Origin: Mytilus trossulus
Lineage: Eukaryota
DNA: 64,000 nt
NCBI RefSeq assembly: GCF_036588685.1
Contig: NC_086376.1
Location: 87,399,630-87,463,629 of the forward strand
Direction of reading: 5' to 3'
The notes beneath the pieces are model-generated. The model was not told the origin of the DNA, ran no database searches, and saw nothing but the letters and a program-made list of their open reading frames with translations. The position numbers and the translations under genes are program-made. Numbering within the stretch: position 1 is the stretch's first letter; each line of letters begins with the position of its first letter. Positions 13,338-42,268 of the stretch are shown here, piece by piece.

Positions 13338-14435
13338 AAACTAGAGGCTCTCAAGAGCCTGTATTACTCACCTGATTCTACAAATGTACTTGGGTTTTTG
13401 AAATCATTTAAAAAAAATAATTGGCTAAAAGTAACAATATACCCTCATAAGGAAAGGAACATTCAGGCCATGTTTGATTTCATTCAATTCAGTGGTTCTC
13501 TAAAAGAAGTCATTTGTATGCATTTCTCATAGGGTCCTATGTTGGACTAGGTCCCCCCCACTGGCGACCGTCTTGGAAGATGGATCAACTACAAAGTAAC
13601 AACACTTGGTCAGCACCTCATAAGGAACATTCATGCCATGTTTGGTTTCATTCCATTTAGTGGTTCTCTAAAAGAAGTCATTTGTATGCATTTCCCATAG
13701 GGTCCTATGTTAAACTAAGTCTTCCGCTGGCAGCCATCTTGGATGATGGATCGGCTACAAAGTAACAACACTTTGTCAGCACCTCATAAGGAACATTCGT
13801 GTCATGTTTGATTTCATTCCATTCAGTGGTTCTCTAAAAGAAATCATTTGTATGCATTTCCCTTAGGGTCCTATGTTAAACTAAGTCCCCCACTGGCGGC
13901 TATCTTGGATGATGGATCAGCTACAAAGTAACAACACTTGGTCAGCACCTCATGAGGAACATTCAGGCCATGTTTGATTTCATTCAATTCAGTGGTTCTC
14001 TTAAAGAAGTCATTTGTATGCATTTCCCTTAGGGTCCTATGTTAAACTAAGTCCCCCACTGACAGCTATCTTGGATAATGGATCGGCTACTAGGTAACAA
14101 CACTTGGTCAGCACCTCATAAGGAAGGAACATTCATGCCATGTTTGATTTTCATTACATTCAGTGGTTCTCTAAAAGAAATCATTTGTATGCATTTCCCT
14201 TAGGGTCCTATGTTAAACTAAGTCCCCCACTGGCGGCTATCTTGGATGATGGATCGGCTACAAAGTAACAACACTTGGTCAGCACCTCATAAGGAACATA
14301 TATTCATGCCATGTTTGATTTCATTCAATTCAGTGGTTCTCTAGAAGAAGTTCAAATGTAAAAAGATAAAGACGACAACGGACGCCAAGTGGTGAGAAAT
14401 GCTCAGTTGGCCCTTCGGGCCAGGTGAGCTAAAAA
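13338..14435 (-). mobile_element. Non-autonomous Helentron-type element with about 5.5 x 166-bp internal tandem repeats
   Basis: Subterminal IR CTCACCTG / CAGGTGAG, hairpins AGGCTCT-CA-AGAGCCT and TGGCCC-TTC-GGGCCA, and 166-bp period (13598, 13764...). Confidence 0.85.
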
Positions 14436-14716: not shown

Positions 14717-14800
14717 ATGGATAACGTCATTAAACAGGGTTACTTAAAGAAATCCAGACCAACAGCTCCTGGAAGTAATCCAGCCAACAGCTTTCTACAG
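14717..14800 (+). CDS. PH-PDZ gene coding exon 1 (MDNVIKQGYLKK...FLQ)
   Basis: ATG at 14717, upstream acceptor TTACAG at 14683, donor GTGGGT at 14801, PH strand 1 motif. Confidence 0.8.
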
Positions 14801-17800
14801 GTGGGTTTTATATTAAATGTTAATGACACATTTATAATTTAAATTTCTTTAGTCTTTTGTCATAAGAGTCAGTGGTTTATTATATAACTAGAATTATTAA
14901 AACAGTATTCTTGTAATGTTGATCATACATAAAGGTTTTCGTTGTCAAATGGGAATTGTTGACCACGACTCAAGGTACAAAATTTTACATTTTATAAAAG
15001 TAATGTATTAACAATCAAACAAACAGATTTTTTTTCATTAATATTTTTTTTCTGCATTTTTATTAAAACTGTCATTAGGAATGTCCAATGGTTCCTACTT
15101 TTCTGAGATCTAATGTGGAAAACAAAATATCTGAAATATTAATACCTGTAAAAAGAGGGATTTTCTAGAATATTATAGTATCTAACAAATAATTGTCCAT
15201 CACATGACAAGGTAAAACATGATACTGTGTACACAATATATGTACTGAACACACTGGCTTTTGATATGTACTCGTTCAACTTTCACTAGTCAACTTACTG
15301 GTTATAACCATGCTGCTCCCAGTGTAAACCATATGTTTCATCATATTGTAATTAAAAATCCCAAGAATATATGTTTATATCATACATTGCGTGTAAGATT
15401 ATATCATTATAGTCTTTATGCTTTGTTTTACAGCTGTTTGAACCAACAAGATGGTTTGTGTTTGGTCTTCGAATTCGTCGTCCATATTTAGAGTATTATG
15501 AGAAAGAGCAGCATGTTTTCACAGCTCAGCCAATCAACAACTTTGATCTTTACGAATGCACTAAAGTTACTTATACTCTGGGTCGTAACAATAGAAACTG
15601 GACATTCTGTTTATTTCTACAAGACAGGGTTCTAGAATTAACAGCAGATTCAAGGTAAATTATCAATTATATTTATTGCCATCTTATTATCTTGAAAAGT
15701 TACATGTCCTTGCTTGTTTTTTTGTAAACATTGTTCTTGTTTGGGATATTACACTAAAAATTTAGATTATAACTGAATATATAATACTCACCTGACTCAA
15801 AGAGTTGGTGTCAGCTTTTGCTCCATGTATCAGATGGCTATTTTTGTTTATCATCATTCATCCTCTGTTAACATCTACAAATATAATCTCCTCTGAAACT
15901 ATCAGGATAAATAACACCAAACTTTTCCACAATCATCCTTATGATATCAAGTTTTACAATTTTGTCTGGTGATACAGCCTACCAAACAACATGACTTCCA
16001 ATGCTAGAAATAGAACAAAGGGTAAAAATGCAAGTACTATTTATTATCATCAGAAAGAGAAATCCGTAGGGTAAGAAATTTTCAAAATGATGAGAACTAC
16101 CTACATACATAGCAGCAATTTCCTCAATTAAAGATTGAAACATTTTTGAGATGTCTATTACATATTTTTCATGATTATTGGACCAGATATCTTTGGAAAT
16201 ATATATTGAACTTTAATTTCAGAACCTCAATTTTAGAAAGACTAAAAACAGTTCTATACATGTGTATAATTTGTATTTTTTTCTTTTTTCAGGGAGGTGA
16301 TGTTAAGTTGGTGTAGGACTTTGGAACATACACTTCAAAATTATGGAGCTTTAGTGAGTATATTAAATGATAACACATTAATTGCCATTGTTTGTATTCC
16401 TTCAGTAACCTTTTTTAATCTGTAGATGAACATAACATAAGCAATATAAGATAATTAAGTAATGCTTATTTAAAGAACGTTGATATTCCTAAATGATATT
16501 TTACATATATAAAGATGCTGTGTGGTTTATATCAATGAGACAAAAACTCAAGGACATACAAAACCAAAAGACTAGACCAACAAAAGACAGGTGTCTATAT
16601 ATAGATCTAGTGTGATTCAGATTTAAATCATTTTGTAGTGTTCTGTACCAGAGACTGTCATGCACCTTGTTGCTAAAATGGTAGTAATAACACATACAGT
16701 GAAATCCTGTAAGATATGTTGTTTATTTTTATTAGAAACATATGCCATCATAACACATATGCTGTGATAATGCTGTAAGATATGTTGTTATTCTTAAAAT
16801 CAAAACACATATACAGTGATTTGTTTATATTTAACAGAAACATGTGCCATCAGAACACATTTACAGTGATTGTTTATTTTAACAGAAACATGTGCCATCA
16901 GAACACATATACAGTGATTTGTTTATATTTAACAGAAACACGTGCCATCAGAACACATATACAGTGATTTGTTTATATTTAACAGAAACACGTGCCATCA
17001 GAACACATATACAGTGATTATCCAGTAAGATACAAACCAAAGAAGTCAGCCAGTCCTCCACCAATAGAAGACAGAGATTCAGCCACTCCCACCCCTCCTC
17101 CCTCTGAACCAGCCCCACCTGTTCCTCGAGAGAATGGACTGGTGCCCTTACAACCCAGAGCAGGAGCAGAATATTGTAATTCAGGTATATTTTAAAATGT
17201 ATTCAATAATAAACTTCTTTTTTTTTCGGAAGTAAGACAAATCTACAATATTCCTATATAGAGGGCAAACCTTTTTCTAAATTGACAGAACAATACAACA
17301 GATGTAATGGCATGTGTTATATCTAGAGTTTAATGAAATTATCCATATATTGCAGATAATAAATTTCTTGCATACTATGGATTCATTATTATTCTTTGTA
17401 TATCAATTTTCGTGGATTTCGTGGGAACAGGCGGACCACAAAATTAAAAGTTCAACGAATTTATAGCAAATTTAGCGTAGGCTTTTATGCAGATTTCAGA
17501 AAAAACACAAATTTAAATATCCACGAACATGTAAGTTTTCCTTAATCCCTGAAAATCGGTACCCACGAAAATAAATGAATCCACAGTATTTCCATTTGAA
17601 AATAAAATATGTATGATTGCCAATGAGACAAATATACACCAGAAACCAAATGATGTAGAAGTAATAAACTATAGGTCACCATACAACCTCGACAATGAGT
17701 AAAACCTATACGTGTACTGCAAAGTCACTTTTGTAATATGTCGATATAATTTCAAGGATGTTTACAGTGGTGTACACTTGAACTTTAACTATTGCAAAAC

Positions 17801-20800
17801 TTTGGCAGACCAGAAGTGATTGATTTTCTAATGACAATTTATACAAAATGAGGAACAGTTGTAGTAAAGACAGATCTTGAAATGTGTTTATTGTTTTAAC
17901 ACAATGTAAGGATTAGATAAGGAAGTGGCAAGCTTTTGGTTTCAGTCTTAGCCTATACAATAGTCAATATATATTGTTACTTTCAATTTAACTATTGTTT
18001 TGATATAAGTGGATTATAACTCTTTGAACTATTTTTAGACTGGGTAGTTGCTGAGAAACCAGAGTCTGAACACAGTGAACCAGACACGTCAGAAGACGAT
18101 TTCGTCAATGAAGAGTTCTTTAAACAGAAAAAGTTAGAAGCATTTAGTAGTAATACATTAAAACCAATATCAAAAACTGAAAATCCTTTCGTATTACACT
18201 CCAGATCAGTTGCCTCACTGCCCCTGAGGTCTTTTAGTTTGCCAGCAGAATATGCAAATGGTACACCTCAGTTACCAGCTAGACCACACAGGAATAAACC
18301 AGTCACCACTGGTACTTCAGAACCTCAGTACAGTCAAGTTAACAAATTAAAACCCAAACCAGAACCAGATTCTGAAGATGTTTATGAATCAGCATTTGAC
18401 TTTGATGATCAGGGTACACAATGTAATCATTCAAATAGAAATACATTAACTGACCTGTCAAGTTATACAACTGATGAATTAGACGAGGGTTTATATGAGG
18501 CAGCTTTTGATGTTCGTGACACACAACCTCTGTTTGAGAAAACAAGTTCTGATCCAATAGTTGAACTTCCCAAGCGAATTTCTAAATTAAAAGACATCGA
18601 TGAACTTTCTTCTGAGAAAAGAAAAAGTCAGATAGCTGTTGAAGAAAATATCTATTCAGGTTTTAATTGTGGTGAAGATAAAAATAATGATGGAAAATTT
18701 GTTGACAAAAAGGCTGATCTTGCAAATAACAATATTAAAAATGAAAACATTTACAGCAATACTAATTCTACGGACATTCCTGTGTCTAAGGGACATTCAA
18801 AAGATAATACAAATCAAAATCAAAATAAAGATCATATTTATTCCAATACTAATGCATGCATTAATACTGAAGCTACATCAATAGAAACAACGATTAACGA
18901 TGAAGAGTCTCAAGGAACTGCTAGTCCCCTCAAACCTCCTAGAAGGAACTCAAGAAATGCATCGAAAAAGAAAGTAGATCCAGGCTATGCAAATTTTGAT
19001 AAAGCAGGAAGTAATAATTCCAAAAAGGTGTCAGAAAAACATGAAAAGACTACAGAAACTGTTCCTTTACCTGTTAGAACTCAGCCTGTGAAGGAAAATA
19101 TTTATGACTTTGGAAAATGTTTACCTCCTCCGGTGAACAAAAGTGAAATAGCAAAGGCTGATTTATATAGTAATTTGAATTCCATTCAAGAACAATCCCG
19201 TGGCAGTGCTGATTTTAAGCAAAGCTCAAAATATACAATTCCCCCACCTTTGAATTTAAATTTTGATCATGCAAGATCTGATTCCTCCTCCCCTGAAACT
19301 CCTCGGAGATTAATTGAGTCACTTAAAATGCCATCAAAATTTGAACCTGTTTCCACCAAAAATGATCTTGATGACTTGCCACCATCACCAACCTCACCAA
19401 CAACACCTGTTAATGATCCTGGTATAGAATTTCCTACTGTTCATAAATCCATAATAAATGTGACTGATATATCTCATAAGAAGCAGTCAACCCCATCACC
19501 AAAACCTCGTCACTCCAGAACTACATCACACTCACCAAAAATTAGACATTCTGAAGACAAAGGCAAGGAGGCACAAAATGTACTGTTACCTAAGTCAAGA
19601 CTCGCTTCTGGAAAACAGGAACGCCCACGATCTTTGATAATGCCACAGCAGTATGACTACATGTCGTCTGTTCATCAACCTGTGCGCAAAAATACTGGAG
19701 AAGCATTATATTCACCTGTGTTAAATAAGAAATGGTTTGGTTCTCAACCAATGCCTGGAATAACCTCTCAACCAAAAGCTGTTGTTGCTTCACAACCAAT
19801 CTTAAATCTTGGTTCCAGTATTGGATCTCAACCAGTATCAAAGAATGGATTTCAACCAATTTCTACAGAAACAGACGAAATTTATCAAGTGCCAAAAAGA
19901 GCCAGATCTGTAAAGGTAAAGCATGAACCCCAACCAACTTTCATTAGTCGTGATATTGAGAGTAATGCTCTTGGTTCCTCACCAAGCCATGATGGCTTCC
20001 AGTTTAATGTTCCTAAGCGACAGACGTCTGCTGAGGATAATGATGATGAGGACAATGATTCACATGATTATGAAGATGCCACTATGCGTCATGGTGAGCC
20101 ACCTCTGCCACCAAGACGAACCAATTCAACTGCTATGAATAACCGTAGTCAGAGTGTGTATGTGCCCTGTAATATTAACCCAGAAGCATCAAACAAAGGT
20201 AAGAATGAAAAGTTTAGCTTCACTAGAAGTTATGAATGTGTGATGACTGTGGATTCATTTTTTTTTCATGTGTACCAATTTTTGTGAATTGAAGGAAATA
20301 ATTAATTTCATGGATATTTTATTTCTTGATTTTGCAAAACTTGGCATACAAACTTATAGAAATGTTTTTAATTCATTGAACAATAGAAATCTTGGATAAC
20401 AATGTGTTTACCTTCAAAATTCATTAAAATTAGTGTCCCACAAAAAATAATAAATCCACAATATTTTAAAAACAAAGAAGTCCTTTTTGTTTTTTTAGTG
20501 GTAATTAAAAAAAAAAGAGAAAAAAAGCAGGTGTGAACACAATAGACTAGGTCAATACTGTTCTCGTTTGAATTGTTTTACATTGTCATTTCCAGGCCTT
20601 TTATAGCTTACTATGGGATATGAGCTTTGCTCATTGTTAAAGGCTGTAAGGTGACCTTTAGTTGTTTACTTCTGTGCCATTTGGTCACTTGCGGAGAGTT
20701 GTCTCATTGGCAATTATACCTTCTTTTTCATATATACAATAGAAGCTATCATCCACAGAAGGCTTATGACCAGAGTTTTTGATGAACACAAATCACTGCT

Positions 20801-23800
20801 TTTCTTTACTTTTTCTCCAAGCAATCTCACTTTTTATACAAAAACCTATGTGCAGACCAAACTGAATGTATTTGAGACTCCACTTTCGTACCATGACATA
20901 TTAATCCATTCTAATGAATTGGCTACTGTGACTAGCCATAGTGATTATGTTATGGTAGGATGTAACATTTTGGGGATATATAATACAAATAGTATTGAAA
21001 ACAATATTCCATACAACCTATCCATGAACATTAAAAAAAAATATCAATGAAATACTCAAATAAACAAAATGTTAATAATTTTGAGTCATGTATGTGTATA
21101 ACCATTTATATTTGTAAGGAAAATGACATAAATTGAATCTGGTATGTTTTCTAAAAATATCAAAAGTAATATTTAAATATGGAATTATCTTTCTTTGTTC
21201 ATTATATTTTTGTTCCCTTCAAATGCTTAATACACTGCAATCTTGAATTAACCTTTATAAATAAATGCAATCTTTACAAGGGCTCTGATTGTAAAACTAC
21301 TGACTCTGTTGTTTATATTTAAAACAAAAAAAACAGAGCACCATATTGATATTTATCTTATAAGTGTTGAAATATGTGCTTGATTATGTCTGTTATATAC
21401 TTGTTTATCTTTTTAGTGATTGTAAGACAGACATCATTACGTGAGAGACAGAGGATTACATCATCGCCAGGATTGGTGACTGTTCTCCCGTTAAAACAGA
21501 GTGAAATAGACATTTTACAGGAAGAACAACATTCACATGGGATCATTGTTAAAATATCACCTGCAGCTTGTCAAAAGATAGCTTTGGTGGATAGCTTTAA
21601 TGGAGTATGGTATGTATTAAACTTGTCAAAAGATAGCTTTGGTGGATAGCTTTAATAAAGTATGGTATGTATTAAACTTGTTAAAAGATAGCTTTGGTGG
21701 ATAGCTTTAATAAAGTATGGTATGTATTAAACTTGTTAAAAGATAGCTTTGGTGGATAGCTTTAATAAAGTATGGTATGTATTAAACTTGTTAAAAGATA
21801 GCTTTGGTGGATAGCTTTAATAAAGTATGGTATGTATTAAACTTGTTAAAAGATAGCTTTGGTGGATAGCTTTAATAGAGTATGGTATGTATTAAACTTG
21901 TTAAAAGATAGCTTTGGTGGATAGCTTTAATGGAGTATGGTATGTATTAAACTTGTCAAAAAATAGCTTTGGTGGATAGCTTTAATGTAGTATGGCATGT
22001 ATTAAACTTGTCAAAAGATAGCTTTGGTGGATAGCTTTAATAAAGTATGGTATGTATTAAACTTGTTAAAAGATAGCTTTGGTGGATAGCTTTAATAGAG
22101 TATGGTATGTATTAAACCTGTCAAAAGATAGCTTTGGTGGATAGCTTTAATGGAGTATGGTATGTATTAAACTTGTTAAAAGATAGCTTTGGTGGATAGC
22201 TTTAATGGAGTATGGTATGTATTAAACTTGTTAAAAGATAGCTTTGGTGGATAGCTTTAATAGAGTATGGTATGTAATAAACTTGTTAAAAGATAGCTTT
22301 GGTGGATAGCTTTAATGGAGTATGGTATGTATTAAACTTGTTAAAAGATAGCTTTGGTGGATAGCTTTAATAGAGTATGGTATGTAATAAACTTGTTAAA
22401 AGATAGCTTTGGTGGATAGCTTTAATAGAGTATGGTATGTAATAAACTTGTTAAAAGATAGCTTTGGTGGATAGCTTTAATAAAGTATGGTATGTATTAA
22501 ACTTGTTAAAAGATAGCTTTGGTGGATAGCTTTAATAAAGTATGGTATGTATTAAACTTGTTAAAAGATAGCTTTGGTGGATAGCTTTAATAAAGTATGG
22601 TATGTATTAAACTTGTTAAAAGATAGCTTTGGTGGATAGCTTTAATAAAGTATGGTATGTATTAAACTTGTTAAAAGATAGCTTTGGTGGATAGCTTTAA
22701 TAAAGTATGGTATGTAATAAACTTGTTAAAAGATAGCTTTGGTGGATAGCTTTAATGGAGTATGGTATGTATTAAACTTGTCAAAAAATAGCTTTGGTGG
22801 ATAGCTTTAATGTAGTATGGCATGTATTAAACTTGTCAAAAGATAGCTTTGGTGGATAGCTTTAATAAAGTATGGTATGTATTAAACTTGTTAAAAGATA
22901 GCTTTGGTGGATAGCTTTAATAGAGTATGGTATGTATTAAACCTGTCAAAAGATAGCTTTGGTGGATAGCTTTAATGGAGTATGGTATGTATTAAACTTG
23001 TTAAAAGATAGCTTTGGTGGATAGCTTTAATGGAGTATGGTATGTATTAAACTTGTTAAAAGATAGCTTTGGTGGATAGCTTTAATAGAGTATGGTATGT
23101 AATAAACTTGTTAAAAGATAGCTTTGGTGGATAGCTTTAATGGAGTATGGTATGTATTAAACTTGTTAAAAGATAGCTTTGGTGGATAGCTTTAATAGAG
23201 TATGGTATGTAATAAACTTGTTAAAAGATAGCTTTGGTGGATAGCTTTAATAGAGTATGGTATGTAATAAACTTGTTAAAAGATAGCTTTGGTGGATAGC
23301 TTTAATGGAGTATGGTATGTATTAAACTTGTCAAAAGATAGCTTTGGTGGATAGCTTTAATAAAGTATGGTATGTATTAAACTTGTCAAAAAATAGCTTT
23401 GGTGGATAGCTTTAATGTAGTATGGCATGTATTAAACTTGTCAAAAGATAGCTTTAATGGATAGCTTTAAAAGAATGGGGTATGTATTAAACTTGTCAAA
23501 AATAGCTTTGGTGGATAGCTTTAAAAGAAAGGGGTATGTATTAAACTTGCCAAAAGATAGCTTTGGTGGATAGCTTTAATGTAGTATGGTATGTATTAAA
23601 CTTGCCAAAATATAGCTTTAATGGATAGCCTTAAAAGAATGGGGTATGTATTAAACTTGTCAAAAATAGCTTTGGTGGATAGCTTTAATAGAGTATGGTA
23701 TGTAATAAACTTGTTAAAAGATAGCTTTAGTGGATAGCTTTAATGGAGTATGGTATGTATTAAACTTGTTAAAAGATAGCTTTGGTGGATAGCTTTAATA

Positions 23801-26800
23801 GAGTATGGTATGTAATAAACTTGTTAAAAGATAGCTTTGGTGGATAGCTTTAATGGAGTATGGTATGTATTAAACTTGTCAAAAGATAGCTTTGGTGGAT
23901 AGCTTTAATGTAGTATGGTATGTATTAAACTTGCCAAAATATAGCTTTAATGGATAGCCTTAAAAGAATGGGGTATGTATTAAACTTGTCAAAAATAGCT
24001 TTGGTGGATAGCTTTAATAGAGTATGGTATGTAATAAACTTGTTAAAAGATAGCTTTAGTGGATAGCTTTAATGGAGTATGGTATGTATTAAACTTGTTA
24101 AAAGATAGCTTTGGTGGATAGCTTTAATAGAGTATGGTATGTAATTAACTTGTTAAAAGATAGCTTTGGTGGATAGCTTTAATAGAGTATGGTATGTAAT
24201 AAACTTGTTAAAAGATAGCTTTGGTGGATAGCTTTAATGGAGTATGGTATGTATTAAACTTGTCAAAAGATAGCTTTGGTGGATAGCTTTAATAAAGTAT
24301 GGTATGTATTAAACTTGTCAAAAAATAGCTTTGGTGGATAGCTTTAATGTAGTATGGCATGTATTAAACTTGTCAAAAGATAGCTTTAATGGATAGCTTT
24401 AAAAGAATGGGGTATGTATTAAACTTGTCAAAAATAGCTTTGGTGGATAGCTTTAAAAGAAAGGGGTATGTATTAAACTTGCCAAAAGATAGCTTTGGTG
24501 GATAGCTTTAATGTAGTATGGTATGTATTAAACTTGCCAAAATATAGCTTTAATGGATAGCCTTAAAAGAATGGGGTATGTATTAAACTTGTCAAAAATA
24601 GCTTTGGTGGATAGCTTTAATAGAGTATGGTATGTAATAAACTTGTTAAAAGATAGCTTTAGTGGATAGCTTTAATGGAGTATGGTATGTATTAAACTTG
24701 TTAAAAGATAGCTTTGGTGGATAGCTTTAATAGAGTATGGTATGTAATAAACTTGTTAAAAGATAGCTTTGGTGGATAGCTTTAATGGAGTATGGTATGT
24801 ATTAAACTTGTTAAAAGATAGCTTTGGTGGATAGCTTTAATAGAGTATGGTATGTAATAAACTTGTTAAAAGATAGCTTTGGTGGATAGCTTTAATGGAG
24901 TATGGTATGTATTAAACTTGTTAAAAGATAGCTTTGGTGGATAGCTTTAATAGAGTATGGTATGTAATAAACTTGTTAAAAGATAGCTTTGGTGGATAGC
25001 TTTAATAGAGTATGGTATGTAATAAACTTGTTAAAAGATAGCTTTGGTGGATAGCTTTAATGGAGTATGGTATGTATTAAACTTGTCAAAAGATAGCTTT
25101 GGTGGATAGCTTTAATAAAGTATGGTATGTATTAAACTTGTCAAAAAATAGCTTTGGTGGATAGCTTTAATGTAGTATGGCATGTATTAAACTTGTCAAA
25201 AGATAGCTTTAATGGATAGCTTTAAAAGAATGGGGTATGTATTAAACTTGTCAAAAATAGCTTTGGTGGATAGCTTTAAAAGAAAGGGGTATGTATTAAA
25301 CTTGCCAAAAGATAGCTTTGGTGGATAGCTTTAATGTAGTATGGTATGTATTAAACTTGCCAAAATATAGCTTTAATGGATAGCCTTAAAAGAATGGGGT
25401 ATGTATTAAACTTGTCAAAAATAGCTTTGGTGGATAGCTTTAAAAGAAAGGGGTATGTATTAAACTTGTCAAAAGATAGCTTTGGTGGATAGCTTTAAAA
25501 GAATGGGGTATGTATTAAACTTGTCAAAGATAGCTTTGGTGGATATCTTTAATGGAGTTTGGTATGTATTAAATTGGTCAAAAGATAGCTTTAGCAAATA
25601 GCTTTAATGGGGTGTGATATGCATTAAATTTGATAAAAAATAGCTTAAGTGGATAGCTTTAAAGGACTGTGGTATGTATTAAATTGTCAAAAGATAGTAC
25701 ATGTACATGTAGTATTAGAGGATTATTTAAGCTAGGTATGTCAAATAATATTGAGGTTTCCATGAGAAAAGATTGGCAGGTTTAAGAAAGCAACAGTGGG
25801 CATATGAAGAGTAGAGCTCTCATAATGCATATACACAATACAGAAAAAAAAAGAAATTCAGACAAATGACCTAAAATACGAATCAAAGAACTCTGATCCA
25901 GACAATTTTGTTTGTACAATGTACTTTAACTTGATTATTACAGGATTATAGGATGGGATTTTAAACATTATCCAAGGTTATCTGAGAGTATTCACATTGG
26001 TGACGAAGTTACTAAAATTAACGACCTCAGGGTAACTAACGCTAACATGGCTAAGAAAGTGTTGAAATCGTGCAATACAGAACAGATAGATCTGGTTATA
26101 AAACGTCTTCCTTACGCTAAAGTGATGGCCATACGAAGACATCAGACTGGTGAAAATCTAGGATTACAACGTTTAGGAGGAACTGCTGAGGTCAGCATAC
26201 TTATATTGATAGGTCAAAATACATTCAGCCAATCAGAAGATGTGTTACTTAGAAATAAGCTAAATAAAATTAAAGTGCAGAAAATAATTTTAATATCATC
26301 TACCATTGAGTCAATTTAAGGGTTTGCTATTATCTGTACCCATTAACAAGCTGTTTGTAATCTGTCTTAATTGGCCCCATCATCCTAATTCTAAAATTAG
26401 CTGAATTAAAGACTTTTCTTCATTATCTATATATGTAGTATGGTCGATTGAACTTACATCCAAAGCTACCATAGATTTAGTATCATATTTAGTTCATAAA
26501 AGTTAGAAATATTCTTCAGAGCTGCATAGGCATTCAATATTAATCTGTCTATTAATTCTGTTATTGCTCTCCTTTAAACTTATGTTAACTTTTCTCATAA
26601 ATGAATAAATACAAGAGACATCTGTAGGCTTCTATTTTGTTTGGACTTATGATGTGATGAAAGTAATACTAGTTTGAGTGATTGCATTCTAATTTTCCAG
26701 ATAACCTATGTGGACCCCTCAGGACTAACTGCTCAACATGGTTTGACAAAACATGCTTCATGTGTGGAGAGTGAGGGAACCTGTAACTGGTGGATTACAG

Positions 26801-28005
26801 AAATAAATAATAGACCACTCAATCTGTCCTTCAAAGGAAATGAGGTAGGGATACAAATAAACACTCAATCTGTCCTTCAAAGGCAATGAGATAGGGATAT
26901 GAATAAACACTCAATTTGTCCTTCTACAAATTTTCTTATGAAAATGGCTTCTGAACATATGTAAAAGTAAAATATAAAAAAGAAGATGTAGTATAATTGC
27001 CAATAAGACAACTCTCCACAAGAGACCAAATAGAACACAAGTTAACAGCTATAGGTCACCGTACAGTTTTCATCAATGAGCAAAGACCATACCTCATAGT
27101 GAGCTTTAAAAGGCCCCAAAATCACAAATGTAGAACAATTCATAAGAGAAAACCAATCGCCTACCGGTGTCATTAATGTAAAGAAAAATAGAGGAAAAAC
27201 AAATATGTAACACAGCAACAAACAACAACTACTGAATAAATTCACAGGCTCATGAATTGGGACAGACACATATATACAAAATGTTGCAAAATTAAATATG
27301 TTAGCAGATACCCAATTAAAACAAGTTTTCCACAGGCACAACCGAACTTTGTATCCAAATCTTTATTATCTATAGAAAAATTAGGTGAAGTTTTAAGTAA
27401 TTTATGGTAATGAAATCCTTTTCTTAATATCTTACCAGTAATACATAAATTATGTTGTTAAAATCTTAAACATCACAACAGGCATTGGCATAGCGAAAGA
27501 GTTGTGAAATATAAAGACTGTAAGTAGGTATAAAATGCCTGCTTTTATACATGTACTATATATCTTGATCTATATCAATTTGAGTTCTTATACTATTAGT
27601 TACATAGTGTGTTAGTGACCTACTACAATATACATGGGGTCAGTAAATTCCATATGGGGTGAGAGCTTAATTCCAGTTGAAAGGAAAAAAAACCTGGGGA
27701 AATATATGCAATAATAAATTTATGCCCTTGGCACATAGATTCAAGATACTTTAATTACATTTTGTTTAAAGTTAAATAGTATACCAAAACATATGAATTC
27801 ATTATTTTTCAGATTGAGAGTACTTAGCTAAATGAAAGTAGAATACTAGTATACACATAAACCCTTTATTTTTCAGATTGAGGCAAAGCTAAACGCAGTT
27901 GGCAAAGACATTTCCATTGTTGTTCATCCATCTGATTTTATAAAGGAACTTAAAAGACAGCTGAAAAAGATGAGAAACTTTAAAGACTTCATGGCTGTGG
28001 CATAA
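14717..28005 (+). CDS. PH-domain / Tyr-motif-rich / tandem-PDZ adaptor protein, about 1145 aa, 9 coding exons
   Basis: join(14717-14800,15434-15654,16293-16353,16986-17184,18039-20198,21417-21609,25944-26190,26701-26844,27877-28005). All introns are GT-AG with matching phases (0,2,0,1,1,2,0,0) and the total is 3438 nt open to TAA. PH hallmarks: VIKQGYLKK, RWFVF, LEYYE, EVMLSWCRTL. PDZ-like hallmarks: IHIGDEVTKIND, ENLGL, WITEINNRPL. Confidence 0.9.
15434..15654 (+). CDS. PH-PDZ gene exon 2 (PH core)
   Basis: TTTTACAG acceptor; LFEPTRWFVFGLRIRRPYLEYYE...LELTADS; GTAAAT donor. Confidence 0.9.
16293..16353 (+). CDS. PH-PDZ gene exon 3 (PH C-terminal helix)
   Basis: Long polypyrimidine tract + CAG; (R)EVMLSWCRTLEHTLQNYGAL; GTGAGT donor. 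Confidence 0.9.
16710..17020 (+). repeat. 48-50-bp tandem repeat spanning the intron 3 / exon 4 acceptor
   Basis: TTTAACAG|AAACAYGTGCCATCAGAACACAT with AG ending at 16837, 16885, 16935 and 16985, plus degenerate copies at 16710-16810. Confidence 0.9.
16986..17184 (+). CDS. PH-PDZ gene exon 4 (Pro-rich)
   Basis: KHVPSEHIYSDYPVRYKPKKSASPPP...AEYCNS; donor GTATAT at 17185. Confidence 0.85.
17373..17588. mobile_element. Tc1/mariner-type MITE (TACTGTGGATTCATT TIR)
   Basis: TACTATGGATTCATT...AATGAATCCACAGTA; related copies at about 20245-20462 and 31263-31478. Confidence 0.75.
18039..20198 (+). CDS. PH-PDZ gene exon 5 (2160 nt, disordered linker)
   Basis: Contains most of the 682-aa ORF in frame; acceptor TTTTTAG at 18038, donor GTAAGA at 20199. 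Confidence 0.93.
21417..21609 (+). CDS. PH-PDZ gene exon 6
   Basis: (V)IVRQTSLRER...CQKIALVDSFNGV(W); donor GTATGT at 21610; phase 2 matches exon 7. Confidence 0.9.
21567..25698 (+). repeat. 55-bp satellite, about 75 copies; unit = last 43 nt of exon 6 + first 12 nt of intron 6
   Basis: CTTGTCAAAAGATAGCTTTGGTGGATAGCTTTAATGGAGTATG|GTATGTATTAAA repeated from 21567, 21622... Confidence 0.97.
25944..26190 (+). CDS. PH-PDZ gene exon 7 (PDZ1 and start of PDZ2)
   Basis: TTACAG acceptor; (W)IIGWDFKHYPRLSESIHIGDEVTKIND...LGGTAE; donor GTCAGC. Confidence 0.9.
26701..26844 (+). CDS. PH-PDZ gene exon 8 (PDZ2)
   Basis: TTTTCCAG acceptor; ITYVDPSGLTAQHGL...WWITEINNRPLNLSFKGNE; donor GTAGGG. Confidence 0.9.
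26816..26925 (+). repeat. 46-bp tandem repeat (about 2.4 copies) across the exon 8 donor
   Basis: CACTCAAT.TGTCCTTC at 26816, 26862 and 26908. Confidence 0.85.
26975..27310. mobile_element. Dispersed SINE-like repeat ('aagaagatgt...gccaatgagacaact' family)
   Basis: At least six related copies in the window. Confidence 0.7.
27877..28005 (+). CDS. PH-PDZ gene last coding exon
   Basis: IEAKLNAVGKDISIVVHPSDFIKELKRQLKKMRNFKDFMAVA*; stop TAA at 28003-28005. Confidence 0.88.
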   Translation: MEAKLNAVGKDISIVVHPSDFIKELKRQLKKMRNFKDFMAVA

Positions 28006-33552: not shown

Positions 33553-34277
33553 CATCAGTCCGTCTGTCAGTCCTGTTTCTTGTCATCGCAACTCCTCTCA
33601 AACCACACAACAGAATTTCACGAAACCTTTTCAGATGATAAGGACATACTATGTAGTTGTGCATATTGACGGGAAATTGCGATTCAATTTTTTTTCTAGG
33701 AGTTACGCCCCTTTGAACTTATTTACTTTAATGTACTACTGCAACAGTTTGTCATCACAACTCCTCTCAAACCACACAACAGAATTTCACGAAACCTTTT
33801 CAGATAATAAGGACATACTATGTAGTTGTGCATATTGACGGGAAATTGCGATTCAATTTTTTTTCTAGGAGTTACGCCCCTTTGAACTTATTTACTTTAA
33901 TGTACTACTGCAACAGTTTGTCATCACAACTCCTCTCAAACCACACAACAGAATTTCACGAAACCTTTTCAGATAATAAGGACAGAATATGCAGTTGTGC
34001 ATATCGACGGGAAATTGCGATACAAATTGTTTTCTAGGAGTTACTCCCCTTTGAACTTATTTACTTTAATTTACTACTGCAACAGTTTGTTATCACAACT
34101 CCTCTCAAACCACACAACAGAATTTCACGAAACCTTCTCAGATAATAAGGACATACTATGTAGTTATGCATATCGACGGAAAATTGTGTTCATTTTACTT
34201 GCGAAGTGAGAATTTGTTTCTTCAGTGACAATATGAAGACGTGGGGTATGTGAGCGTGCTCACAAAGGTTCTTTAAT
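33496..34277 (+). mobile_element. Non-autonomous Helentron-type element with about 3.7 x 169-bp internal tandem repeats
   Basis: T-rich start, ATACCCCA / TGGGGTAT subterminal IR, CCGT/CTGT microsatellite and 3' hairpin GTGAGC-GT-GCTCAC. Confidence 0.85.
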
Positions 34278-36033: not shown

Positions 36034-36477
36034 GGTGAAATCACCCTTACATCGCAACAGGAACACTTCACAGATGAAATAATTAGCAAACTTGGCTAAT
36101 TTGTCACATTGTTCAAAAAATATCCATCCTCAAAACTAACGATACTTGAAATCCCAGTCTACTCTATCACAGAATGGAACAGGTACAAAGGACATAAAAA
36201 CCCTGAAACCTTTAAAGACCAAGATAGCCAATTGCAAAAACAAATTGAAAACATAAACGAGTGGATCCACACAACAAACCAGGAACTTGGTAGTCGCTCG
36301 CCATTACTCAACCATCATCTTCGTGCTCGAAAACAACAAGCAAGAGGGAAACACAAGCCTTGCAAAAAGTATTATAACGTCAAATTGTACAAAGACGGTA
36401 TTCATCCAAAGCAGCTGTTAGCTAAAGCCTGGCTGGCAGAAATAGTTGAAAAAGTTCGTAGAGACTGTTGGGCATAA
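36034..36477 (+). pseudogene. LINE 5' ORF, SGNH/GDSL esterase-like C-terminal part
   Basis: LYKDGIHP followed by a helix (block V DxxHP). The frame extends back to the insertion point with one TAA. Confidence 0.7.
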
Positions 36478-36634
36478 CATAGTGACACTTATATTAATGC
36501 TTGAAGATCAGGAGGCATGGAATGACCAAGCCACACTGAAACCTTCAAGTACTTGATATCAAGCTGTCGATACACTGTCTGATCTGCATAAAAACAACTG
36601 GACTACCTCAATAACGTCTAATACTAAAACAAGA

Positions 36635-38744
36635 ATGGCAAGTTCCATTATACAGAGAGCCAAAATTACAGACTCGCACAAAAAGGTGACAGAGCTTATA
36701 ATTGGTGACTACACTCTTTAGTTGATAAAACCCTGAAGAAAAAACTTGAAGCCACTAAACGTTTGCAACATGTTGAATACAAATTTACCAACGGAGGCGT
36801 GGTTATCACATCCGATGCAGCAACATATTCAGAATGGCGGCAATGAGATATTATGAAACACTCCCCCCAAATCATGGAGTGGCACACATAAAGAAAACAA
36901 CAGACAGCACTCGACTCCATACAGTCCAAAACACTGTGCGAGTAGTACAACCATCGAACAAAAGCTACACAGTGAATATATACTATACAACAAGCAGACT
37001 ACTGGTGAATGGTAAAAATGTGTCTGACTTTATTGATAGAGACTTGCAGAACATCCACAATATTATTTCTTCTAGTACAAGCAATAACACCAAACTTAAT
37101 ATTAATGACCTCAATGCTATGTTACGGGAACAGCTGACTAGCATACTAAATGCAAATCAAATGAAGTATGAAGAAGTTAATAGCCAAAATACACAAGATA
37201 AAGATTCTGATAACATTGCTTGTATAAAATGCACCAGAAATTGTAGGACAAAAAGTACTTACTGCTCGACAGGCAACCACTGGGTTCACTACAGTTGTCA
37301 AAACCTAACACAGGAGGACATAACAGAGGTGTAAAAAGGTGAAAATAACACCTACACCTGTACATTCTGTACTGGAGACTCCAAGAAACTAGCTTTCCCA
37401 AATACTCTGCAAATAGCCAACTGCAACCAACTAAATGACCTACTACAAGAAAAGGTAACATTAAGAACAGATGAAACTACAATGAGCAACAAAGACCTGT
37501 GCTTTGTGTGCGATCAACAAACTGATAACACACCGTGGGATGTTTGTGATCTTTGCAATAATATGAGCCACACTACCTGTATGAACATTGAAAATAATGA
37601 ACACCACTGTAACGCATGCATAGGTAGTGAAATAATGGAATACACCACTAGCGTAATTAAAACGGATAGGCTCCAGATAAGCCAATATAACTTGACCGAG
37701 CCAATAGAGGTCATATCTGAGGAAAATACAAGCACTGTTGAGTCTGAGACAACCCTCAAAACAGTAATATCTAGTAACAGTCCTCAACCAAAACAGTGTG
37801 TCTTGAAAAAGATTGTACTACCAGAAAGGATAACAAAAGCTTCACTGCAAACCCAAGAAGAACTCCAACTCAAACATAGTGAACTCAGAGAAAGGGAGTT
37901 AAAACTTAGGAAAACTGAAGAGCAACTTAAACTTAGGGAAAAAGTGGTTAATGAATACAAAAAAGAGAGAATACTACTAGAAACAAGATGCCAGAGACTG
38001 GAGGCAAGAAACTGTGAATTAGAACAAACGGTAAAAAGCTTAAGGAAAAGCATTGAAATGAGCAACTTGTCAGAAGAAACCAGCCGAAATGAACCAGCTC
38101 ATACACACGTGAGGAATTCTTTGCAAACAGGCAAGCCGGAAATGAATGATGTGTTCAATATAGTGCAAACACAGCTAAACAACAAGGTTCTGGCCCTACA
38201 CGAAAAGCTAACAAACATAGTCTTCTCTAAAATAGACAAACAACTGGACAAAATTAGCTTGGCAGACATGAATGAAATGGAGAAAATAAATCCTGAAATG
38301 TATAATGTTGAAAGATCTACACCATTACAATCAAAACAGGACAAGAAAGAAACGGAAGAAATAACTCCTCAACTTAACAACATTGAAAGAAATACACTAT
38401 TGCAATCAAAACAGGACAAAACACCGATTACTTCCAAGAACGCAACAGAAACTGCTCCCCATGTAGGGCAGCCGGTACAGAACAATTCAAAACGATATAT
38501 GCAACCAAGTAATCCTGCTAACAAATGGAACCTAGCCAACAGCCTAACAGGTCAACCACTTGTATACAGAGGATACCAGAAATACAGTTTGCAACAACCT
38601 ATGGACCAAGCAGGTGTCCCATTCAACCAAAAACAAGGCAGACGCAACCCACAGATTATAAACAATACAACCACAGAGAAAATTATACAACCAACAAATG
38701 CTCACTTTTTAGACAGACCAGGCCTCAAGAAACAGAACATGTAG
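36635..38744 (+). pseudogene. LINE ORF1-like protein with two PHD-type Cys/His clusters and a coiled coil (frameshifts and stops)
   Basis: CIKC..C..GNHWVHYSC..(stop)..CTFC; CFVC..CDLC..HTTC..CNAC; ELRERELKLRK heptads. Confidence 0.8.
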
Positions 38745-41700
38745 CAGGAACACAAATCGATAGCAACAAGGGGAAGGGACATCTAACAATAGCCTCCTAT
38801 AATTGCAAAAACATCAAAACCTGTGGTCATGCAATCGATGAACTATTAAAATCAAATCAATTAATCTTATTACAAGAACACTGGCTTTTCCAATCACAAA
38901 TTGATATGTTAAGCGACCTGCACTCAGAAATCAACTATGCAGGAAAGGGAGTCGATATTAATAACCCTTTACTCCCGATGTATATGCCAAGAGGCTATGG
39001 CGGTGTTGCTATCATATGGCAAAAAAGTATCGATCACTTAATAAAACCATTATCTGAAGGATCAGAAAAGATGCAATGCATAGAAATATTAAGCAATAGT
39101 GCGCACAACTTGCTGCTTGTGTCAGTTTACTTACCGTCCAAAGGAAGTCGAGACCATGTTGAGGAATTTTTAGAATGTATTGACCAACTCTACGAACTTT
39201 ATCAAAAATACTATGGAACGCACGACATAATAATTGGAGGAGACCTAAACGAGGACTTAAACGATACTGCGACGTCAAGAACAAGAAATAGATATTTGAG
39301 GAACTTTATCTCAGAGTGTAACTTGTCCTTCAACAATGCAGGAAAAACCTTCATCAAGGCATCTGGAGTAGAATGTTCGGAACTTGATTACTTTCTACAC
39401 ACTCTCAAAGACCCAAAGCTATACTCAAACAAAACAGTTCTACACTCCGTTAAAATGAATGTGTCAGATCATCATCCAGTACAAATGACGTGTGTGTTTG
39501 ATTTCGCGAAGGTCACACAAAAGCAAAGGAAAAGTAGCAACGTCACCCCAAAAATAAAATGGGACAAAATGGACATGGACCTATATAAAGCTATGGTCGA
39601 CACATCATCAAAGTTGATATTGGAAAAATTAGACAATAAACAGATAGGACTGGAAGAATCTATTCAGACAACATGTGAGATAATGGCCAACTCAGCCATT
39701 AAATCCTCCAACATCAAACCCTCGTATAATGCAAAACCGAAACTTAAAGTATGGACACCTGCAATACAGGTTGCTCTTAAGGAGATGCGAAATAGCTACA
39801 ATGCATGGGTAAAATCAGGAAAACATGAAGATCTAGACAATGTCCTTTTCTTGGAGAAACAACGAACAAAACAACTTTTTCGAAAATCAGTCCGTGTCGA
39901 AATTGCAAAAAGAAGAGAGGACGAAAAAGAGCTGATCATGGAAACTAGAACCAGAAATATGAAACTATTCCATAGGCTAGTTAGAAATACACGTAAAAAA
40001 GGCGGAGAAATTATAATGGACTTGAATGTAAATGGACACTGCTATACGGGAGATGAAAACATGCTAGCAGGTTTCAAGGAACATTTCCGCACACTAGCAA
40101 CATACGATGAAAACATCAACATTGACAACGACTATCATCAAAATGTGGAACATGAAATTCATATAATAAATCAATTGGTTAAAGGCAAGAACATTCCTGA
40201 TGCATCAATGGAAGAAATTTCAAACGCAATCAAAAATATCAACAAGGGTAAATCTGCTGACTACTATGGCATCACAATTGAACATATAGTTAATGCGGGA
40301 GAAATCATGGTCATCTTGCTCCAAAGCATCATAAATGAAATTTTCCAACAAGGATATGTGCCAGATCTCCTAAAAATCGGACTTCTCACACCAATTTTCA
40401 AAAACAAAGGAACTAAGAATGATGCAGGAAATTACAGAGGAATAACAGTGCTGCCTGTAGTGAGCAAAATAATAGACACAGTGCTTAAAAATAGAACACA
40501 ACCATCAGTAAAAGCCGTGCAACATAAATATCAACGTGGATTCACAAGTGGTTCAGGACCAATGAACTCAGCACTACCAGTGGAAGAAGTGTATCGTGAA
40601 GTTCATGACGGTGAAACAGAAGCACAAATAATACTACTGGATGCAAAATCAGCGTTTGACAAAGTGATACATACCCATATGATGAGAAGAGTGTACCAAG
40701 CAGGTATCGAAGACAAACATTGGTCACTAATAAGTAGTCTGCACCAAAACGCTGCCAGTACCAGCAAATGGGGAGGATATATCTCTGAGTGCTTCCAAGT
40801 CTCATTGGGTGTTCGTCAAGGTGGAATACTCAGCACGGACCTATACAAGCTCTACGTAAATCCACTACTAGACAGATTGGAAAACTCAAATCTTGGTATA
40901 AGGATTGGTAATATAACATGCAATGCCAGCGCCTGTGCTGATGATATAGCTTTAATGAGTACAAAAGAAGACGACACACAAGTGCTGATAAATATGGCGC
41001 ACGATTTTGCGTACATGGAAGGCTATGAGCTACAGCCCCAAACAAGTGTGGCGTTAAACCTCTTGTCAAAAACTCATAAAAAGAACAATACCAACGAGTG
41101 CATATTCAACATTGGAAATAACGTTATGCCAAATGTCAAGCAGGCACTACATCTTGGAATAATTCGAACAACATCAATGAAGGAAAACGTAACTTTAAAT
41201 GTGGAGGAAAATATCAAGAAAGCTAGAAGAAGTGCATAGGGCTTATTTGGCGGTGGTTTCCATGGACATAATGGACTAGACCCAGAAAAACTGGTACACC
41301 TGTTTAAAACATACATTAGCCCTGTGTTACTCTACGGAATGGAACTATTACTACCCAAACCAGCTATGCTACTTCAACTAGAAAAATTCCAGAAAAGATT
41401 ACTGAAACAGCTGCTTTCACTTCCTACATCAACTCCAGACCCGGCGGTGTACATTCTATCAGGAATACTACCCGTCGAAGCGCAAATTGACAAAAGAGCA
41501 CTGGGATTACTTAACAACATCTGTAACCAAGATGAAAGCAGCACGGAAAAACAACTGGCGCGAAAACAAATCAGTGTTAAATCGCTGGACAGTAATAGCT
41601 GGTTTATACAACTCAAAGAGATCCTTTCAAAATATAACATGGATGAAATCAACACCTACCTTGATATACCTATGAAGAAAGAAAAATGGACCACATTGAT

Positions 41701-42268
41701 AAACCGAGCTACCCAAAAACACTGGAGCGAGTCAATAACAAGAATGGTTCCTTACTACAAAGGCCTACAACACTTAAATTACACGGAATTTCACCAAGGG
41801 AAGCTACACCCTCTAATAAAAATCAAATGTCAATCAGCTAGAGACATAGGAAGAATTCCTCCAAAGCTAAAAATTCTAACCGGCACATACATTTTGCAGT
41901 CACACAGAATCAAAATGTATGAAAATGAAACAGACCTGATCTGTCTTATATGTCACCAAGGAGACGAAACGCTGGAACATTTTATCCTGGAATGTGAAGG
42001 GTTAGCCGATACTAGGAATTCAATTATGGATGAAATTAGTGCCATTCTGAAGGATTCAAGAAATGTAGACTTTCATAAGCAATCATCAAAAGTAAAGATG
42101 CAAATTCTACTGGACATTACAATGCTGCGGGAAAATCTAAAACTAGATGCACAACTAATGGCCGAAATTGAATATTGTAGCCGCCGACTTCTCTTTTTGT
42201 TACACACCACCAGATACCGTTTCCTGTCAAAAGGATGGAAAAAGGACAAGAAAAACGTAAAGGTGTAA
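38525..42268 (+). pseudogene. LINE ORF2: AP endonuclease + reverse transcriptase + CCHC, with one in-frame TAG at 41237-41239
   Basis: SYNCK, LQEHWL, GDLN, SDHHPV; NYRGITVL, LDAKSAFD, GVRQGGILS, CADD; CLIC..ETLEHFILEC. The ORF at 41324-42268 is in the same frame. Confidence 0.95.

What the first reader, a model, noticed from the sequence alone, without database searches (positions are those of the whole stretch)
16710..27882. Four splice junctions of one gene have each been tandemly duplicated into the intron
Seen: the exon 4 acceptor (48-50 bp x4-6), exon 6 donor (55 bp x~75), exon 8 donor (46 bp x2.4) and exon 9 acceptor (17 nt, offset 64) each have copies containing the junction plus exonic sequence. 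The units are unrelated to one another, and the other obvious tandem array inside the gene's introns is not apparent. In the three arrays the most diverged copies lie farthest from the exon, and none of the offsets to a recognisable decoy site keeps the full protein. Inference: either a junction-targeted mutational process (transcription- or splicing-coupled breaks, or RNA-templated repair) or selection for decoy splice-site arrays that tune splicing, seen here at different stages from 2 to 75 copies. I cannot confirm from the sequence whether this is already described.
Basis: partly seen in the sequence, partly recalled or inferred. Interest (0 to 1): 0.85.

Follow-up and report, generated by a model that had tools for sequence, protein, structure and literature searches.

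The report
Splice-junction minisatellites in a mussel gene
Four exon-intron boundaries of one Mytilus trossulus gene have been copied in tandem into the neighbouring intron (one about 75 times); this is a real but already described kind of repeat ("mirage" minisatellite), and a small matched control suggests it needs no special cause in this repeat-rich genome.

Summary
The gene is Mytilus trossulus LOC134716225, a PH-domain protein of 1145 aa.

Four of its 16 splice junctions lie in the end unit of a local tandem duplication:
- exon 4 acceptor: 50 bp, three extra young copies plus older ones
- exon 6 donor: 55 bp x75, with 69 intact donor motifs
- exon 8 donor: 46 bp x2.4, decoy changed from GT to AT
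- exon 9 acceptor: one old copy of about 50 nt

Each unit occurs only at this locus. The exon parts are conserved coding sequence, so the exon is the source. Every decoy tested would give a premature stop.

The kind is known from human F7, CBS, IFI6, LMNB2 and PDGFA, and from amphioxus "mirages". This scan has noted it many times on other DNA of this genome.

The special-mechanism reading is not supported here. In a sample chosen without regard to repeats, 3 of 152 myosin exon ends carry such duplications (2.0%), the same as matched non-coding positions (2.0%). Decoy donors show no extra conservation, and the big array grew by ordinary block duplication. Four of 16 in one gene is still unusual (P about 2e-4 before allowing for a genome-wide search). 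RNA reads and orthologous DNA could not be obtained.

The parts
14717..28005 (+). Coding part of M. trossulus LOC134716225 (PH-domain protein with a conserved C-terminal region weakly like PDZ, 1145 aa). Exons: 14717-14800, 15434-15654, 16293-16353, 16986-17184, 18039-20198, 21417-21609, 25944-26190, 26701-26844, 27877-28005 (stop included).
   Evidence: All nine exon pieces are 100% identical and contiguous in RefSeq XP_063435155.1. Orthologues exist in M. edulis, M. galloprovincialis and M. californianus. PH domain at residues 4-115. Weak PDZ match in exon 7, below Pfam's cut-off.
16690..17019 (+). Exon 4 acceptor array. Three young 48-50-bp decoy copies plus a 19-nt partial copy (16799-16965), each full copy holding about 16 nt of pyrimidine tract with AG and about 34 nt of exon start. 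The authentic copy follows, with exon start at 16986. Older, longer and more diverged copies lie at 16690-16716 and 16719-16782.
   Evidence: TRF; local alignments; junction probe score 50; unit found only at this locus; use of any decoy acceptor gives a stop at residue 128-166.
21567..25697 (+). Exon 6 donor array. 75 copies of a 55-bp unit made of the last 43 nt of exon 6 and the first 12 nt of the intron, then a 14-nt partial copy. 69 copies keep the donor motif G|GTATGT. Five copies read GC at the donor and one is degenerate.
   Evidence: TRF; copy-by-copy segmentation; unit found only at this locus; the exon tail encodes a motif conserved in distant orthologues; identical blocks recur at lags of 15, 17 and 32 units; every decoy donor tested (copies 2-5, 7 and 10) gives a stop at residue 986.
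26816..26924 (+). Exon 8 donor array. 46-bp unit made of the last 29 nt of exon 8 and 17 nt of intron, x2.4. The second copy has AT in place of the donor GT.
   Evidence: TRF; sequence; 4 mismatches between copies 1 and 2; junction probe score 34; unit found only at this locus.
27780..27893 (+). Exon 9 acceptor duplication. An old, gapped copy (27780-27832) of the authentic acceptor region (27850-27893; exon start at 27877). The two share an exact 17-mer across the AG at an offset of 64.
   Evidence: Sequence; gapped local alignment; junction probe score 17, against 11 or less at the 12 unduplicated junctions; the decoy gives a stop at residue 1108.

Best explanation
These are four independent junction-spanning minisatellites, the kind called "mirages" in amphioxus.

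How each arose. One local tandem duplication (slippage or unequal exchange) happened to cover a splice junction. One copy stays next to the exon body and keeps the gene intact. The other copies lie in the intron, so the event is tolerated. An array, once seeded, grows and shrinks by ordinary unequal exchange. At exon 6 this took the form of multi-unit block duplications up to 75 copies.

Why it is silent. The spliceosome uses the copy that adjoins the exon body: the first donor for exons 6 and 8, and the last acceptor for exons 4 and 9. This happens although many decoys are identical in sequence to the authentic site. Any use of a decoy would give a premature stop and a truncated product.

Function. 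No function is needed. In this genome 8-10% of non-coding positions have a local copy within 400 nt, and about 2% lie in the end unit of a local repeat. Junctions are hit at about that rate.

Shown: the anatomy, the exon as source, the canonical joins in the annotated protein, no extra conservation of decoys, and the base rates. Inferred: the neutrality and the rule by which the splice site is chosen.
For: - Arrays and junction positions.
- Exon boundaries identical to RefSeq XP_063435155.1.
- Contigs of about 4 kb (P0150, P0152, P0154) encode the full 1145-1146 aa. They are too short to be genomic, so I take them to be assembled transcripts with the normal joins.
- Exon tails are conserved in distant orthologues, so the exon is the source.
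- The units occur nowhere else in the genome.
- Block duplications at lags of 15, 17 and 32 units.
- Donor positions are not less variable than the rest of the unit.
- The exon 8 decoy is dead, and every decoy tested gives a stop.
- Repeat-blind sample: 3 of 152 myosin exon ends (2.0%) against a matched edge rate of 2.0% and 1.9% at random non-coding positions; P(3 or more of 152) = 0.58.
- The same kind is described in human F7, IFI6, CBS, LMNB2 and PDGFA, where mostly the first donor is used (PMC1557585). It is described in amphioxus genes at both 5' and 3' boundaries without disturbing splicing (PMC3087553, PMC3902484).
Against: - Four of 16 junctions in one gene, with no array inside the roughly 5.4 kb of remaining intron, is unlikely at the 2% base rate: P = 2.3e-4, and Fisher P = 0.0017 against the myosin sample.
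- If about 25,000 genes had 16 junctions each (my assumption), only about 6 such genes would be expected in the whole genome.
- Unchecked notes of this scan list many such genes in a small part of the genome, some with 10-25 junctions. That points to heterogeneity between genes or to a junction bias.
- The control sample is one gene family, and its 95% interval (about 0.4-5.7%) still allows up to about a threefold excess.
- Silence of the decoys was not checked with reads.
Confidence: 0.68

Rival explanations
1. A mutational process biased towards splice junctions, or towards particular genes, seeds these arrays more often than elsewhere. Examples would be breaks or template switching coupled to transcription or splicing in the germ line. 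This gene would be one of its hot targets.
For: Four of 16 junctions are hit and no array lies in the intron interiors of this gene; P = 2.3e-4 at the base rate. In 5 of 6 cases I looked at, the unit is mostly exon with only 9-21 nt of intron. Unchecked notes of this scan report many genes with several such junctions, one of them about 100 kb from this window.
Against: The repeat-blind myosin sample shows exactly the background rate (3 of 152 against 2.0%). Unit ends do not coincide with the splice sites: they lie 12-17 nt into the intron and 29-43 nt into the exon. That is not what a break at the site of splicing chemistry predicts. The 75 copies come from array dynamics, not from repeated junction events. 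This gene was picked out because of its pattern, so its P value overstates the case.
Confidence: 0.2
2. The arrays are kept by selection as decoy splice sites that tune splicing or expression. They might soak up U1 or U2AF, delay intron removal, or divert a share of transcripts into decay.
For: 69 intact, identical donors and three or four intact acceptors (three young copies and one older, more diverged one) sit beside the authentic sites. Human junction minisatellites can supply extra donors that are used (IFI6 and CBS, as reviewed in PMC1557585).
Against: Donor positions vary as much as the rest of the unit (5 of 9 against 28 of 55). The exon 8 decoy has lost its GT. Copy numbers run from 2 to 75 and the units are unrelated. 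The high likeness between copies is explained by recent block duplication. Exon ends elsewhere are hit at the background rate.
Confidence: 0.06
3. Assembly artefact: the arrays, above all the 4.1-kb one, are mis-assembled or inflated copies of a short duplication.
For: Long tandem arrays are hard to assemble, and I could not lay any reads on the region.
Against: The copies carry a structured pattern of variants, with nested block duplications and degenerate end copies, which collapse or inflation errors do not produce. The same kind of array turns up at unrelated loci of the assembly. The window holds no gaps.
Confidence: 0.03

Closest known systems
Human junction-spanning VNTRs: F7 intron 7 (37 bp x5-9), IFI6 (6-16), CBS intron 13, LMNB2, PDGFA (PMC1557585)
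   Same: The first monomer spans the exon-intron boundary, so the authentic donor is followed by identical pseudo-donors. Normally the most upstream donor, or the first few, are used.
   Different: The human cases are donor-side only as listed in that paper, one array per gene, and at most about 25 decoys. Here there are four junctions in one gene, two of them acceptors, and 68 intact decoy donors. Splicing behaviour was not measured here.
Amphioxus "mirage" minisatellites (Adh3, globins BflGb6 and BflGb9, TnC, PGBD5; PMC3087553 and PMC3902484, which cite Canestro et al. 2002, a paper not held in the library)
   Same: Tandem duplications of exon-intron boundaries at both 5' and 3' ends. Units range from tens of bp to about 160 bp. 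Splicing is undisturbed. The end copies are left out of homogenisation. The origin is stated to be unknown.
   Different: A different phylum (a bivalve mollusc), and a much larger copy number at one junction. Length polymorphism and somatic instability, shown for amphioxus, were not testable here.
Ordinary intronic minisatellites and satellites with higher-order repeats
   Same: Growth by unequal exchange in multi-unit blocks, degenerate end copies, and locus-specific units.
   Different: The end unit overlaps a coding exon and carries a working splice site.

Membership tests
Junction-spanning ("mirage") minisatellite | Head-to-tail tandem copies (two or more) | tested here: met
   TRF and copy-by-copy alignments.
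Junction-spanning ("mirage") minisatellite | The end monomer contains an authentic exon-intron boundary (exon letters plus the splice site) | tested here: met
   Boundaries are identical to RefSeq XP_063435155.1. Exon parts are 34, 43, 29 and 17 nt.
Junction-spanning ("mirage") minisatellite | The exon is the source: its part is ancestral coding sequence and the unit is not a dispersed repeat | tested here: met
   Exon edges are conserved in distant orthologues. The units occur only at this locus.
Junction-spanning ("mirage") minisatellite | The normal mRNA uses the authentic site and the decoys are silent or minor | tested here: inconclusive
   The annotated protein and three likely transcript contigs of about 4 kb carry the normal joins.
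Junction-spanning ("mirage") minisatellite | Copy number varies between individuals (VNTR) | not testable with these tools
   No reads and no second assembly could be reached.
Selected decoy splice-site array (regulatory element) | Decoy splice sites conserved beyond the rest of the unit | tested here: not met
   5 of 9 donor positions are variable against 28 of 55 overall. The exon 8 decoy reads AT.
Selected decoy splice-site array (regulatory element) | Arrays kept at the same junctions in related species | not testable with these tools
   No orthologous DNA was available.
Junction-targeted mutational process | Junctions are hit more often than matched non-coding positions | tested here: not met
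   3 of 152 repeat-blind exon ends (2.0%) against 2.0% at matched random positions. The sample is small and from one gene family. This gene itself has 4 of 16.

The most novel reading that the evidence does not exclude
Mussel genomes have a tandem-duplication process that favours exon-intron junctions, or particular (perhaps germ-line-expressed) genes. It would seed "mirage" arrays well above the background rate. This gene's four hit junctions, and the multi-junction genes noted elsewhere in this scan, would be its footprint.
Probability: 0.2. Interest if true: 0.7.

Novelty: new member of a known kind. Interest (0 to 1): 0.3.

Why it matters
The finding is a clean natural test case for splice-site choice. 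68 decoy donors and at least one decoy acceptor are identical to the authentic site in sequence and local context, yet the annotated mRNA uses only the copy next to the exon body.

The more useful result is the base rate. In this genome about 2% of any positions, exon ends included, lie in the end unit of a local tandem duplication. Thousands of such junction arrays are therefore expected without any special mechanism. That sets the bar that claims of enrichment, including earlier notes of this scan, must clear.

I found no paper describing this repeat type in bivalves.

Tried and rejected
A metagenome scan with exon 7 found no relative. Whether the arrays are shared between Mytilus species is therefore unknown.
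- Larger repeat-blind sample. The kinase search mostly returned intronless or tandemly amplified genes, which are useless for junctions.
- First attempt to mark exons by paralogue comparison. It was too noisy because recent paralogues share their introns. I redid it with paralogues on different chromosomes only.
- Exon edge recruited from a dispersed repeat or transposon. Rejected: the units are unique to this locus and the exon parts are conserved.
- Gene identity. Pfam gives only the PH domain above its cut-off, and there is no relative of solved structure by sequence. The C-terminal PDZ likeness is weak; "Syntenin-1" is only a database name for a snail orthologue.
- Spliced model. In one search exon ranges were joined inside a local script to find the first stop, and only positions were printed.
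- No stretch looked human, and the window holds no N.
Full report
WHAT IS THERE. TRF finds three arrays between the start and stop codons of one plus-strand gene: 16799-17019 (50 bp x4.5), 21567-25697 (55 bp x75.3) and 26816-26924 (46 bp x2.4). It finds no other array in that span. The window holds no N.

THE GENE AND ITS BOUNDARIES. Open frames and GT-AG sites give nine coding exons:
- exon 1: 14717-14800
- exon 2: 15434-15654
- exon 3: 16293-16353
- exon 4: 16986-17184
- exon 5: 18039-20198
- exon 6: 21417-21609
- exon 7: 25944-26190
- exon 8: 26701-26844
- exon 9: 27877-28005

A search with exon 5 found proteins of 1146 aa in M. edulis and M. californianus. The cluster also holds M. galloprovincialis and M. 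trossulus proteins of 1145 aa. Every exon piece of the window is 100% identical to RefSeq XP_063435155.1 of M. trossulus (LOC134716225) and lies contiguously in it, with the split codons R, D, V and W exactly as predicted. The window is therefore M. trossulus, and NCBI's own model uses the splice sites next to the exon bodies. Three contigs of about 4 kb that encode the full protein (P0150, P0152, P0154) are too short to be genomic, so I take them to be assembled transcripts with the normal joins. The protein has an N-terminal PH domain and a conserved C-terminal region with only a weak PDZ match.

THE FOUR JUNCTIONS. A 50-nt probe centred on each of the 16 junctions was aligned to the next 400 nt of intron. 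It scored 50 at the exon 4 acceptor, 47 at the exon 6 donor, 34 at the exon 8 donor and 17 at the exon 9 acceptor. The other twelve scored 11 or less.
- Exon 4 acceptor. Three young decoy copies and a partial one precede the authentic copy. The nearest decoy is identical to the authentic copy over 50 nt. Each full copy holds about 16 nt of pyrimidine tract with AG and about 34 nt of exon start. Older, longer copies lie at 16690-16782.
- Exon 6 donor. There are 75 copies of a unit made of 43 exon nt and 12 intron nt. 69 copies keep G|GTATGT.
- Exon 8 donor. The unit is 29 exon nt plus 17 intron nt. The second copy reads AT where the donor GT should be.
- Exon 9 acceptor. The exact 17-mer is the core of an older gapped copy, 27780-27832 against 27850-27893.

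Use of any decoy acceptor, or of any decoy donor tested (copies 2-5, 7 and 10), gives a premature stop. That bookkeeping was done inside a script, and no joined model went to a search tool.

DIRECTION OF COPYING. The tail of exon 6 encodes a motif conserved in orthologues as far away as insects. The exon 4 start and the exon 8 end are conserved in a more distant mytilid. Each of the three units is found only at this locus in the 1.3-Gb genome. The exon is therefore the source, and the arrays are not pieces of a dispersed repeat.

HOW THE BIG ARRAY GREW. Identical blocks of 7-9 units recur at lags of 15, 17 and 32 units. Copies that differ from the exon copy by a single base occur all along the array, and only the last two or three copies are degenerate. 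So one seeding event was followed by ordinary unequal exchange.

IS IT MORE THAN CHANCE? This genome is very rich in local repeats. Outside the gene, 8-10% of random positions have a copy within 400 nt on a given side, and there are about 0.15 arrays per kb.

For a sample chosen without regard to repeats, I took the 30 best myosin-head exon loci. They merged into 21 regions totalling 81.5 kb. I marked coding segments by conservation between paralogues on different chromosomes. Of 152 segment ends, four scored:
- a 79-bp x3.1 donor array
- a 60-bp x6.9 donor array
- a two-copy acceptor duplication of about 55 bp
- a 29-bp x32 array that abuts an acceptor but holds no exon letters

That makes 3 true cases in 152 (2.0%).

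As a matched control, I asked how often a random non-coding position lies in the end unit of a local repeat, facing outwards. The answer was 2.0% in the introns and flanks of those loci and 1.9% in this window outside the gene. The two rates agree, with P(3 or more of 152) = 0.58. An earlier, narrower count gave 1 of 77. In this sample, junctions are hit as often as anywhere else.

At the 2% rate, 4 of 16 in one gene has P = 2.3e-4, and Fisher's test against the myosin sample gives P = 0.0017. If about 25,000 genes had 16 junctions each (my assumption), about six such genes would be expected genome-wide. A reader who scans everything will meet some of them. On the other hand, unchecked notes of this scan list many such genes, some with 10-25 junctions. 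If those notes hold, genes differ in their proneness.

SELECTION ON THE DECOYS. In the 55-bp array, 28 of 55 positions vary, and so do 5 of the 9 donor positions. There is no extra constraint on the donor. One decoy donor is dead.

MOST LIKELY MECHANISM. A tandem duplication that covers a junction leaves one intact copy joined to the exon body. The rest becomes intron, so the event is tolerated, whereas a duplication wholly inside an exon is not. The spliceosome then takes the first donor after the exon (exons 6 and 8) and the acceptor that adjoins the exon body (exons 4 and 9), although many decoys are identical to the authentic site. This is inferred from the annotated mRNA, not measured. 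For donors it matches the 5'-to-3' rule shown for human F7 (PMC1557585).

WHAT IS KNOWN. Minisatellites whose first monomer spans an exon-intron boundary are described for human F7, IFI6, CBS, LMNB2 and PDGFA (PMC1557585). Tandem duplications of 5' and 3' boundaries are called "mirages" in amphioxus genes, where they leave splicing undisturbed and their origin is stated to be unknown (PMC3087553, PMC3902484). I found no paper on them in bivalves. This scan has noted the same thing many times on other DNA of this genome.

A metagenome scan found nothing. Decoy use, copy-number variation and sharing between species therefore remain untested.

VERDICT. It is a new member of a known kind. The special-mechanism readings are not supported by the tests I could run, but a junction bias or gene-specific proneness is not excluded.

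Noticed in passing
L048:2885-3124 (G000:C3:77964492-77964731, minus-strand gene): A 79-bp x3.1 array made of about 58 nt of a myosin-head exon end plus its donor. It is a junction minisatellite found in a sample chosen without regard to repeats.
   Followed up: yes
L063:2078-2491 (G000:C10:32769559-32769972, minus-strand gene): A 60-bp x6.9 array made of the end of an N-terminal myosin exon plus its donor (GTAAGT). The neighbouring paralogue about 28 kb away has no array at the matching place.
   Followed up: partly
L046:3216-3326, approximate (G000:C10, about 32796271-32796381, minus-strand gene): A two-copy duplication of about 55 bp spanning a myosin exon acceptor (pyrimidine tract, AG and 11 nt of exon). 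TRF does not list it.
   Followed up: partly
L064:1952-2881 (G000:C7:78755904-78756833): A 29-bp x32 array of pyrimidine-rich units that ends within 3 nt of the acceptor of the myosin P-loop exon but contains no AG and no exon letters.
   Followed up: partly
window 137-2807: A 34-bp x78 satellite with no evident link to an exon. Its first and last copies are the most diverged.
   Followed up: partly
window 13454-14351 and 33580-34186: Arrays of 166 bp x5.3 and 169 bp x3.6. They are unrelated to each other. They are also unrelated to the dispersed satellite of about 160-169 bp shared by three myosin loci.
   Followed up: partly
window 36100-42265 (+): A LINE-type retrotransposon. One open frame of 905 codons carries an endonuclease domain (Exo_endo_phos) and a reverse transcriptase domain (RVT_1). 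The strand is strongly A-rich.
   Followed up: partly
window 57352-57564 and 58240-58428 (+): Two exons of a temptin-like gene (Pfam Temptin_C). No tandem array lies at their ends.
   Followed up: partly
G000:C1:26.00-26.03 Mb, C3:16.31-16.36 Mb, C4:20.13-20.15 Mb: Long head-to-tail series of near-identical open frames with a protein-kinase domain, spaced about 1.7-1.9 kb apart. There are dozens of copies per site.
   Followed up: no
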